Assembly (NCBI RefSeq): GCF_001194135.2
Contig: NC_068984.1
Location: forward strand, 47,106,816-47,170,815
Length of the DNA stretch: 64,000 nt
DNA from: Octopus bimaculoides
Lineage: Eukaryota
Reading direction: 5' to 3'
The notes beneath the pieces are model-generated. The model worked only from the letters and a program-made list of their open reading frames with translations, made no database searches and had not been told where the DNA came from. Made by a program: the position numbers and the translations under genes. Numbering within the stretch: position 1 is the first letter of the stretch; the number at the start of each line of letters is the position of its first letter. Below, in pieces: positions 16,851 through 17,579 of this stretch.

Positions 16851-17579
16851 ATATAAATACAGTGCACATTTAAACACATAAGAGGTATCCATCATAGGAC
16901 TACCTGCACGCTACAAAGGCCAGTTAAATTCCAAACCACTATTAGGGATATAATTTCGAATGGAATGAAAAATAAAAACATTTACCATCTAACTCCTGGA
17001 CCAAATGGTCTCAGCCTTTTTTTTTAGCAAATGTGTATATATATTTAATCTAAGGTGTACCTGCTGAAGAAGGCTTCGCCTAGCAAATTATTTTATTTGA
17101 GAAAAAAATGTCTGAAACCATTTGGTCCGGGAGTTAGATGGTAAATGTTTTTATTTTTCATTCCCTTCGAAATTTTATCCCTAATAGTGGTTTGGAATTT
17201 AATTGTCCTCTCTAGCGTGCAGGTCGTCCTATGATGGATACCTATTATGTATTCAAATGTACACTATATTTATATGAATTATATATAGTCTATTGACTAA
17301 ATTGTTACACGCTAGGCCACTGGTAATGGAAATTTCTAATATTTCAGATTACCCTTCCATATTATTAATTATTGATAATTTTTTTCTTGGATAGTTTTCG
17401 AAATGAAAAAGTCGGCATATTTATTTTCTACCGACAAGGAGCTGCGCATGCGCGGTAGATTAGAAAAATTAGAATGTATAAGCACGGGGCATATACTAGA
17501 TTGCCTCGTGTATATATATTTACTCTAAGGTAATGGAAATTTCTAGAATTTCAGATTACCCTTTGATATTATTCATTAT
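16851..17579 (+). mobile_element. Penelope-like terminal repeat or retrozyme-like unit with a fold-back arm
   Basis: Inverted arms 16851-17032 and 17095-17275 (about 90% identity by eye); 24-nt direct repeat at 17033 and 17508 (period 475); 51-nt direct repeat at 17322 and 17529; HHR core at 17060-17131; gctaggccactgg shared with the PLE remnant at 37765. Confidence 0.65.
17060..17131 (+). ncRNA. Type I hammerhead ribozyme motif (intact core)
   Basis: Stem I CCUG (17060-63) with CGGG (17128-31); core CUGAAGA (17064-70); stem II AGGC with GUCU (17110-13); GAAA (17114-17); stem III ACC-auuu-GGU; GUC cleavage triplet ending at 17127. Confidence 0.75.

What the first reader, a model, noticed from the sequence alone, without database searches (positions are those of the whole stretch)
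16851..17579. Retrozyme-like unit: intact hammerhead ribozyme in a ~475-nt terminally redundant monomer with a fold-back arm
Seen: a complete type I HHR at 17060-17131 (CCUG/CGGG stem I, CUGAAGA, AGGC/GUCU stem II with a long loop containing caaat/atttg, GAAA, ACC-auuu-GGU, GUC cleavage site). The 24-mer gtgtatatatattta(a/c)tctaaggt just upstream (17033) recurs 475 nt later (17508), so 17033-17531 reads as one monomer plus terminal redundancy. The second copy then jumps through a GGT microhomology into a repeat of block 17322-17372, which is itself a hairpin. A 180-bp inverted copy (16851-17032) precedes the monomer and carries the 3' half of the HHR with GAAA changed to GAGA. A tgcgcatgcgc palindrome lies near 17445. 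Established: PLE terminal repeats and non-LTR retrozymes carry type I HHRs in monomers of a few hundred nt and can yield circular RNAs. Inference: this is a non-autonomous, ribozyme-bearing retroelement family, possibly circRNA-forming, that I cannot match to a described cephalopod family.
Basis: partly seen in the sequence, partly recalled or inferred. Interest (0 to 1): 0.85.

Follow-up and report, generated by a model that had tools for sequence, protein, structure and literature searches.

The report
Hammerhead-like motif in a fold-back repeat
A 730-base non-coding block inserted in a GATA microsatellite has the layout of a Penelope-type or retrozyme-type retroelement insertion and carries one match to the minimal hammerhead ribozyme pattern. 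That match fails the standard ribozyme models, is unlikely to fold or cut in this copy, and no second copy could be found to show it belongs to a family.

Summary
These are the minimal type I hammerhead (HHR) consensus at 17060-17131, the 24-mer at 17033 and 17508, the 56-mer at 17322 and 17529, the ~180-nt inverted copy at 16851-17032 with GAGA for GAAA, and GCGCATGCGC at 17444.

The HHR pattern is the only one in the window (0 of 1000 shuffles strict, 23 of 1000 relaxed). It lies in the window's only complex long inverted repeat, and the whole block splits a same-strand (GATA)n array. That layout matches published Penelope-like element (PLE) and retrozyme insertion architecture.

The ribozyme reading itself is weak:
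- No Rfam hammerhead model scores, even at E<=10 on 111 nt.
- Position 10.1-11.1 is A-U, not the conserved G-C.
- Helix II closes a 35-nt loop and loses to a local AGGC-UUC-GCCU hairpin. HHR pair probabilities are about 0.001.
- The 3' half is buried in a -244 kcal/mol hairpin.
- There is one HHR only, so this locus cannot release a circle.

No other copy exists in the window, and none could be reached, because no animal genome collection was available. A Tc1/mariner-like TA-CAGTG terminus and a replicative-rearrangement origin remain live rivals.

Verdict: plausible relic of a known kind, function unproven, modest interest.

The parts
16828..16853 (+). Left flank: (TAGA)6.5 microsatellite, same strand and motif as the right flank. 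Inferred to be half of the split target array.
   Evidence: TRF; sequence
16851..17032 (-). Inverted partial copy of unit positions 17095-17275 (left arm of the palindrome). On the minus strand it starts inside HHR loop 2 and ends at the GATA array.
   Evidence: the repeat finder (174 nt, 91%); alignments (164/183 columns)
16995..17016 (-). Degenerate 3' half of the HHR in the inverted copy: GGCU-GAGA-CC-AUUU-GG-UC-CAGG. A13 is G, and no 5' half lies upstream on that strand.
   Evidence: Sequence; differences at positions equivalent to 17111, 17116 and 17129
17025..17032 (+). TAGCAAAT, first copy of an 8-nt direct repeat (second copy 17081-17088). The pair brackets the 48-nt centre that holds the 5' half of the HHR.
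   Evidence: Sequence
17033..17507 (+). Full 475-nt unit (GC 33%), defined by recurrence of its first 24 nt at 17508.
17060..17131 (+). Match to the minimal type I hammerhead consensus. Predicted cleavage is after C17127. Position 10.1-11.1 is A-U, and loop 2 is 35 nt (17075-17109).
   Evidence: Negative evidence: Rfam; folding
17071..17081 (+). Local hairpin AGGC-UUC-GCCU (-2.9 kcal/mol). It uses the 5' strand of helix II and out-competes the long-range AGGC/GUCU pairing.
17095..17275 (+). Right arm of the palindrome. It contains the HHR 3' half (17110-17131). With the left arm it forms a hairpin of about 180 bp (-243.7 kcal/mol, z -28.9).
17322..17377 (+). Block B, source of the duplicated 56-mer. 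It is a small hairpin and ends in UUGAUA, which shares GATA with the target array.
17444..17453 (.). GCGCATGCGC palindrome, the consensus I recall for an NRF1-type binding site. It is the only perfect copy in the window. A promoter role is an untested inference.
17508..17584 (+). Patchwork partial second unit. It holds the first 24 nt of the unit (17508-17531), then jumps at GGT to a copy of block B (17529-17584). This skips the equivalent of 17057-17321, including the HHR.
17578..17648 (+). Right flank: (ATAG)17.8 microsatellite.
   Evidence: TRF

Best explanation
The block at about 16854-17582 is one composite, non-coding insertion inside a (GATA)n microsatellite. It was assembled from a ~475-nt unit by template switching during reverse transcription, in the manner of Penelope-like elements and their non-autonomous derivatives, the metazoan non-LTR retrozymes.

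Shown:
- The block lies between two same-strand GATA arrays.
- It consists of an inverted partial copy (16851-17032), one full unit (17033-17507) and a patchwork start of a second unit (17508-17584).
- Its junctions sit at short homologies: GGT internally, and ATA or GATA at the array borders.
- The unit contains the window's only match to the minimal type I hammerhead consensus.

Inferred:
- Both 3' ends of a cut GATA target primed on a multimeric or circular unit RNA at GAUA/UAU microhomologies. The right-hand cDNA ran through more than one unit length with one internal jump. The left-hand cDNA gave the inverted copy.
- The hammerhead-like motif descends from the HHR that such elements carry in their terminal repeats.
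- In this copy the motif is at best a weak or dead ribozyme. Helix II is stretched over a 35-nt loop and competes with a local hairpin. Position 10.1-11.1 is A-U. Any transcript that includes the left arm locks the 3' half into a hairpin of about 180 bp.
- With only one HHR, this locus cannot release a monomer or a circle.
For: - Same-strand (GATA)n lies on both sides, abutting the block ends. Only about four GATA-type arrays occur in 57 kb, so two arrays 730 bp apart in the same orientation is unlikely unless one array was split.
- Inverted copy, full unit and partial second unit.
- The HHR consensus is unique in the window, with 0/1000 strict and 23/1000 relaxed shuffles.
- It sits in the only complex-sequence long inverted repeat of the window. 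A chance motif would land in that 425 bp of 57 kb less than 1% of the time.
- Literature on PLE insertions describes partial tandems, an inverted 5'-truncated copy at the 5' end, microsatellite bias and an HHR in pseudo-LTRs (PMC8557442). It also reports dual HHRs 100-700 bp apart on opposite strands, and helix III of 1-2 bp with a 2-4 nt loop in metazoan type I HHRs (PMC4209133).
- Retrozyme units are 150-450 bp with low GC (PMC7229834). The unit here is 475 nt and 33% GC.
- Retrozymes derive from PLE pseudo-LTRs.
Against: - No Rfam hammerhead family scores at the gathering score or at E<=10, even on 111 nt.
- The G10.1-C11.1 pair, described as highly conserved, is A-U here.
- Loop 2 is 35 nt, against the usual compact helix II.
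- The HHR-constrained fold is -13.5 against an MFE of -19.0 kcal/mol. Helix I and II pair probabilities are about 0.001. The 72-nt motif folds no better than shuffles (z +0.89).
- The distal helix I extension is not better than chance.
- The HHR 3' half differs between the arms at 3 of 22 positions, no less than the rest of the arms.
- No unit junction coincides with the predicted cleavage site 17127/17128.
- No second copy in the window. No RT or endonuclease remnant in the ORFs scanned.
- TRF reports no ~475-nt tandem here.
- Family status is untested because no animal genome could be searched.
Confidence: 0.45

Rival explanations
1. The palindrome at about 16854-17272 is a fold-back MITE of the Tc1/mariner superfamily with ~175-nt terminal inverted repeats and a TA target duplication. 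The hammerhead pattern is a chance match spanning its centre and inner right repeat. The 24-mer and 56-mer copies downstream are filler from later repair.
For: - The arms end in TA|CAGTGCAC on the left (16858-16867) and GTACACTA|TA on the right (17259-17268), the classic TA-CAGTG...CACTG-TA signature with one mismatch.
- TACAGTG occurs only 6 times in the window, so finding it within 10 nt of an arm end has a chance of about 1e-3 to 1e-2.
- The arms are 90-91% identical with a short centre, as in internally deleted transposons.
- The ribozyme models and folding do not support a working HHR.
Against: - Arm homology continues 7-9 nt beyond CAGTG, up to the GATA array. The target would therefore have to be a perfect AT palindrome, or CAGTG is not the true terminus.
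- It does not explain why the block including the non-palindromic 17276-17582 lies between two same-strand GATA arrays.
- It does not explain why a 24-mer from the palindrome centre recurs 475 nt downstream.
- No related termini elsewhere in the window.
- It requires the only HHR-consensus match in the window to fall by chance in the only complex palindrome.
Confidence: 0.2
2. This is not a mobile element. It is a one-off complex rearrangement of unique intergenic DNA at a fragile GATA microsatellite, made by replicative template switching or polymerase-theta end joining. That process produced an inverted duplication and two templated patches. The hammerhead pattern is coincidence.
For: - All junctions show 3-4 nt microhomology (GGT, ATA/GATA), and the pieces are copied from within 500 nt, as in templated-insertion repair.
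- The duplicated pieces have similar divergence: 4-12% for the direct repeats and 9-10% for the arms. This is compatible with one event.
- No second copy anywhere that could be searched.
- No ribozyme-model support.
Against: - Same coincidence problem: a 1e-3-per-window motif falls inside the only complex palindrome.
- The c-to-a continuity at 17507/17508 is what a circular or tandem template gives.
- The layout matches the specific PLE pattern, with the inverted copy at the 5' side plus a partial tandem plus a microsatellite target.
- The absence of copies is uninformative. The collections searched hold no animal genomes, and 57 kb of window only excludes very high copy numbers.
Confidence: 0.2
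3. One reading: an intact, self-cleaving type I HHR in an active retrozyme monomer that yields a ~475-nt circular RNA from this locus.
For: The complete catalytic core, GUC triplet, type I topology and invertebrate-style helix III are present. The MFE of the 72-nt motif is -10 kcal/mol, which passes the loose cut-off of below -5 kcal/mol used in one retrozyme pipeline. Unit size and GC fit retrozymes.
Against: - There is only one complete HHR. The second unit lacks it, so two cuts are impossible, and the two-consecutive-units criterion fails.
- The MFE structure is not the HHR fold.
- A-U at 10.1-11.1; 35-nt loop 2; no Rfam hit.
- The left arm sequesters the 3' half.
Confidence: 0.07

Closest known systems
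Metazoan non-LTR retrozymes (type I HHR tandem repeats; Cervera and de la Pena 2020, PMC7229834)
   Same: Non-coding, low-GC unit of a few hundred nt. Type I topology with the full catalytic core and GUC site. Helix III of 2 bp beyond 15.1-16.1 with a tetraloop, as described for invertebrate HHRs. The unit start recurs after one unit length.
   Different: Only one complete HHR and 1.0 units plus fragments, not a tandem array; TRF reports no ~475-nt repeat. Helix II carries a 35-nt loop and an A-U closing pair. A 180-nt inverted copy is attached. No evidence of other copies or of RNA circles.
Penelope-like element insertions and their pseudo-LTR hammerheads (PMC4209133, PMC8557442)
   Same: Inverted partial copy abutting the 5' side, partial tandem, insertion into a microsatellite, and HHR motifs on opposite strands about 100 nt apart (one complete, one half).
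   Different: No RT or GIY-YIG coding sequence in or near the block. The inverted copy and the right end stop at different unit positions instead of a shared 3' end. PLE HHRs keep G10.1-C11.1 and usually a palindromic helix III and loop 3, which this one does not. The target is (GATA)n, whereas (TA)n, (CA)n and (C)n are the ones reported.
Naiad 'HHR_half_core' cases (PMC8557442, Methods)
   Same: CUGANGA and GAAA boxes separated by 35-50 nt (43 nt here), in an element type that targets microsatellites and forms tandem/inverted structures.
   Different: Those cases are described only as core halves that do not fit stem/loop descriptors, and they lie in coding Naiad elements. Here all three helices can be drawn and no Naiad ORF is present.
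Tc1/mariner-derived fold-back MITEs
   Same: Long terminal inverted repeats around a short centre, TA next to CAGTG at the arm ends, no coding capacity.
   Different: Arm homology extends beyond CAGTG. About 300 nt of non-palindromic sequence and duplicated patches lie with it between the two GATA arrays.

Membership tests
Hammerhead ribozyme, type I | Catalytic core C3-U4-G5-A6-N7-G8-A9, G12-A13-A14, A15.1-U16.1, H17 | tested here: met
   CUGAAGA 17064-70, GAAA 17114-17, U17126, C17127
Hammerhead ribozyme, type I | Three helices around the core, helix I open (type I) | tested here: met
   4 bp, 4 bp and 3 bp including two G-U pairs. Only hit in the window; 0/1000 strict shuffles
Hammerhead ribozyme, type I | Conserved G10.1-C11.1 pair closing helix II | tested here: not met
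   A17071-U17113. The pair is described as highly conserved in PMC4209133
Hammerhead ribozyme, type I | Compact helix II and loop 2 able to contact loop 1 of helix I | tested here: inconclusive
   Loop 2 is 35 nt with an inner hairpin. Helix I has a 6/2 internal loop after 4 bp, but its distal extension is no better than shuffles. Tertiary contacts cannot be computed here
Hammerhead ribozyme, type I | Recognised by curated covariance models (Rfam Hammerhead_1, _II, _3, HH9, HH10) | tested here: not met
   No hammerhead family at the gathering score or at E<=10 on 851 nt or 111 nt
Hammerhead ribozyme, type I | The HHR fold is a favoured secondary structure | tested here: not met
   Constrained -13.5 against MFE -19.0 kcal/mol. 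Helix I and II pair probability about 0.001. z +0.89
Hammerhead ribozyme, type I | Core conservation and compensatory changes across copies | not testable with these tools
   No other copy in the window or in any reachable collection
Hammerhead ribozyme, type I | Self-cleavage at the predicted site | not testable with these tools
   Needs an in vitro transcription assay
Metazoan non-LTR retrozyme | Tandem repeat with at least two consecutive units, each with a complete HHR | tested here: not met
   One complete HHR. The second unit keeps 24 nt plus 56 nt and skips the HHR. TRF reports no ~475-nt period. Criterion
Metazoan non-LTR retrozyme | Unit of about 150-450 bp, low GC, non-coding | tested here: met
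   475 nt (slightly above the range), GC 33%, no ORF above 41 aa from a start codon (longest stop-free stretch 56 codons) (range)
Metazoan non-LTR retrozyme | Multi-copy family; linear and circular RNAs of unit length | not testable with these tools
   No animal genome or transcriptome collection available
Penelope-like element (insertion architecture) | Inverted truncated copy abutting the 5' side, plus a partial tandem | tested here: met
   Definition
Penelope-like element (insertion architecture) | Insertion into a microsatellite | tested here: met
   Same-strand (GATA)n on both sides
Penelope-like element (insertion architecture) | RT plus GIY-YIG ORF, or sequence similarity to a PLE pseudo-LTR of the same genome | tested here: not met
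   No ORF in the block and no Pfam hit in the 20 ORFs scanned elsewhere in the window (1.6-58 kb). Pseudo-LTR similarity could not be tested
Tc1/mariner MITE | Terminal inverted repeats ending in CAGTG-type termini, flanked by a TA duplication | tested here: inconclusive
   TA-CAGTG on the left and CACTA-TA on the right, but homology runs 7-9 nt further out

The most novel reading that the evidence does not exclude
A retrozyme or PLE-derived family, in a cephalopod if the window is one, whose type I hammerhead tolerates a 35-nt expansion of helix II and an A-U pair at 10.1-11.1. It inserts into GATA microsatellites as fold-back dimers, so one locus could give both ribozyme-processed RNA and a ~180-bp hairpin RNA that feeds small-RNA pathways.
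Probability: 0.1. Interest if true: 0.5.

Novelty: new member of a known kind. Interest (0 to 1): 0.3.

Why it matters
If the family is real, it would extend hammerhead-bearing non-autonomous retroelements to another molluscan lineage. These are already documented in cnidarians, mussels, flatworms, insects and amphibians. It would also give an example of an expanded helix II and of GATA-array targeting. That would be useful for repeat annotation and for circular-RNA surveys, but it would not change the current picture. As it stands, the locus mainly shows that a full match to the minimal HHR consensus in a suggestive context is still not evidence of a working ribozyme.

Tried and rejected
- **Rfam.** I searched at the gathering score over the window, and at E<=10 over 16800-17650 and 17040-17150. 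There were no hammerhead hits, only sub-threshold noise such as snoRNA, intron and miRNA models.
- **Copies in the window.** blastn with word size 7 found only the internal repeats plus low-complexity matches. Searching the arm terminus with up to 3 mismatches found only itself.
- **Copies elsewhere.**
  - Two metagenome scans, one prokaryote-genome scan and one viral scan with 22-25-nt arm patterns found 0.
  - A word-indexed protein search with the 56-codon open frame shared by both arms found 0.
  - Exact-product look-ups of two window ORFs found nothing on record.
  - A full-text search for sequence strings found only unrelated primers.
  - The supplement list of an octopus repeat paper showed a single short document, which I did not open.
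- **Other identities.** There are no tRNA genes in the window. By eye there are no A/B boxes and no inner/outer direct repeats of the IR-DR type in the arms.
- **Coding context.** Twenty ORFs across the window, including the open-frame cluster at 32314-33884, gave no meaningful Pfam hit.
- **Helix I extension** (AUCUAA/UUAGAU plus AUUUA/UAAAU) as support for a true type I stem: rejected, because it is no better than shuffles or genomic controls.
- **Assembly artefact** as the origin of the palindrome: rejected, because the arms differ at about 10% of positions.
- **Bacterial promoter and terminator scan:** not informative for this sequence.

Full report
**1. What is in the sequence**

- A match to the minimal type I hammerhead pattern lies at 17060-17131:
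  - Helix I is CCUG (17060-63) with CGGG (17128-31).
  - The CUGAAGA box is 17064-70.
  - Helix II is AGGC (17071-74) with GUCU (17110-13) around a 35-nt loop.
  - GAAA is 17114-17.
  - Helix III is A-CC/GG-U with loop AUUU.
  - The triplet is GUC, so cleavage would follow C17127.
- The 24-mer at 17033 recurs at 17508 (23/24).
- A 56-mer at 17322 recurs at 17529 (88%). The two repeats overlap at GGT.
- An inverted repeat of 174 nt at 91% complementarity joins 16851-17024 to 17102-17275.
- With gaps, that homology runs 16851-17032 against 17095-17275, 164 of 183 columns.
- The inverted copy carries GGCU-GAGA-CCAUUUGGUC-CAGG at 16995-17016 on the minus strand.
- GCGCATGCGC at 17444-17453 is the only perfect copy in the window.

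**2. Is the hammerhead pattern more than chance?**

My own descriptor used 4-bp helices I and II, at least 2 bp in helix III beyond 15.1-16.1, and loop 2 up to 50 nt.
- It finds this site as the only hit on either strand of the window.
- It found none in 1000 dinucleotide-preserving shuffles. A relaxed version found 23 in 1000.
- My analytic estimate, based on the 24 CUGANGA boxes present, is about 1e-3 per window.
- That is significant for one window. It still allows tens of chance matches in a genome of gigabase size, so the pattern alone does not settle anything.

**3. Tests of the ribozyme reading**

- Rfam finds nothing in the window at gathering scores.
- It finds no hammerhead family at E<=10 on 16800-17650 or on 17040-17150. 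Only unrelated models appear there, at 10-24 bits.

The motif departs from what the literature calls typical (PMC4209133).
- The G10.1-C11.1 pair is described as highly conserved. It is A-U here.
- Helix II is normally compact.
- Helix III and loop 3 are usually palindromic. CCAUUUGG is not fully palindromic.
- Helix III itself, 2 bp plus a tetraloop, does match the invertebrate style.

Folding does not favour the hammerhead.
- For 17040-17150 the HHR-constrained structure is -13.5 kcal/mol, against an MFE of -19.0.
- Helix I and II pairs have ensemble probabilities of about 0.001.
- The 5' strand of helix II instead closes a local AGGC-UUC-GCCU hairpin at -2.9 kcal/mol.
- The 72-nt motif folds no better than shuffles (z +0.89).
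- A possible distal extension of helix I (AUCUAA/UUAGAU, AUUUA/UAAAU) is no better than shuffles or genomic controls.
- The 3' half (17110-17131) lies in the right arm of the palindrome. An RNA containing both arms folds into one hairpin of -243.7 kcal/mol (z -28.9).
- Between the two arms the HHR 3' half differs at 3 of 22 positions, no fewer than the rest of the arms.

**4.

- The block is bounded by (TAGA)6.5 at 16828-16853 and (ATAG)17.8 at 17578-17648, the same motif on the same strand. Only about four GATA-type arrays occur in 57 kb of called sequence. One array split by a ~730-bp insertion is therefore the simplest reading.
- Both borders fall at short matches to the array...GATA|TAAATA on the left, and UUGAUA in block B on the right.
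- The second unit is best read in three parts. It has the first 24 nt of the unit, then a jump at GGT that skips the equivalent of 17057-17321 (including the HHR), then 56 nt of block B, then the array.
- The 174-nt inverted repeat is the only complex-sequence long inverted repeat in the window. All others are N runs or microsatellites.
- An 8-nt direct repeat, TAGCAAAT (17025-32 and 17081-88), brackets the 48-nt centre that carries the 5' half of the HHR.
- The arms end in TA|CAGTGCAC and GTACACTA|TA, a Tc1/mariner-like signature. However, the homology continues 7-9 nt further out.

**5. Surroundings and related sequences**

- The window is AT-rich (about 31-35% GC), full of microsatellites, and has 18 N gaps.
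- It has no tRNA gene and no Pfam-recognisable coding remnant among the 20 ORFs tested.
- I could not confirm the organism.
- No second copy of any part of the block exists in the window.
- The collections available hold no animal genomes. The following all returned nothing: pattern scans of metagenome, prokaryote and viral contigs; a protein-word search with the arms' shared open frame; exact-product look-ups; and a literature string search.
- The decisive test, conservation and covariation across copies, therefore remains undone. The absence of copies here says little.

**6. Most likely explanation (about 0.45)**

The layout matches what is published for PLE insertions (PMC8557442; PMC4209133):
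- partial tandems
- an inverted truncated copy abutting the 5' side
- microsatellite insertion bias
- hammerheads in the terminal repeats
- HHR pairs on opposite strands 100-700 bp apart

Animal retrozymes are reported to derive from PLE pseudo-LTRs. They have low-GC units of 150-450 bp.

I therefore read the block as one retro-insertion of a non-autonomous, PLE-type unit into a GATA array. The steps below are inferred, not shown.
- Both target 3' ends primed on a multimeric or circular unit RNA.
- Template jumps made the patchwork second unit and the inverted copy.

The coincidence of the window's only HHR-consensus match with its only complex palindrome favours this reading over pure chance.

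The same data say this copy's HHR is weak or dead. They also show that the locus, with one HHR, cannot release a circle. It fails the two-consecutive-units criterion.

**7. Rivals**

- A Tc1/mariner-type fold-back MITE plus a chance motif (about 0.2). It is supported by the TA-CAGTG ends. It is weakened by homology beyond them, by the GATA arrays around the larger block, and by the downstream 24-mer copy.
- A one-off replicative or end-joining rearrangement of unique DNA at a fragile microsatellite plus a chance motif (about 0.2). It gives the same microhomology junctions and cannot be excluded without a genome-wide copy count.
It conflicts with the single HHR, the folding results and the Rfam result.

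**8. Novelty and score**

Hammerhead-bearing PLEs and retrozymes are well documented across animals, including molluscs. If real, this is a new member of a known kind, with an unusual helix II and a GATA target. Function is unproven and this copy is probably inactive. Interest is 0.3.

The most novel reading still open is a family with an expanded helix II that inserts as fold-back dimers and feeds both ribozyme and hairpin-RNA pathways. I give it a probability of about 0.1.

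Noticed in passing
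window 16828-16853 and 17578-17648: Same-strand (GATA)n arrays abut both ends of the block, so the whole 730 bp looks like a single insertion into one microsatellite.
   Followed up: yes
window 16858-16867 and 17259-17268: The palindrome arms end in TA|CAGTGCAC and GTACACTA|TA, a Tc1/mariner-like terminus. Arm homology continues 7-9 nt further out, as ATATAAATA/TATTTATAT.
   Followed up: partly
window 17025-17032 and 17081-17088: An 8-nt direct repeat, TAGCAAAT, brackets the 48-nt centre that holds the 5' half of the HHR. Without that segment and one repeat copy the palindrome would have only a 6-nt loop. It might be a small insertion or a template-switch junction.
   Followed up: partly
window 17444-17453: Perfect GCGCATGCGC, the consensus I recall for an NRF1-type binding site, inside the AT-rich unit. 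It is the only perfect copy in the window (0.36 matches with up to 1 mismatch expected, 3 seen). It could be an internal promoter element.
   Followed up: partly
window 17071-17081: AGGC-UUC-GCCU hairpin directly after CUGAAGA. If the 32 nt at 17082-17113 were removed, the sequence would read as a compact hammerhead. This hints that loop 2 may be a secondary insertion.
   Followed up: partly
window 5195-5221: (TAACCC)4.5, an interstitial telomere-type repeat.
   Followed up: no
window 32314-33884: A run of overlapping plus-strand open frames in shifting phases, in a stretch with higher GC (0.39) and AT skew 0.149. It looks like a decayed coding sequence but has no Pfam hit.
   Followed up: partly
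window 29145-29197, 52078-52176, 63641-63783: Short minisatellites: a perfect 17-nt unit x3.1, a 42-nt purine-rich unit x2.4, and a 33/43-nt unit x2-4.
   Followed up: no
window, 18 N runs (e.g. 50981-51942, 58384-59334): 6,951 N in 18 gaps, mostly next to microsatellites, so this is a draft assembly. Long six-frame 'ORFs' and long 'inverted repeats' reported across them are artefacts.
   Followed up: yes
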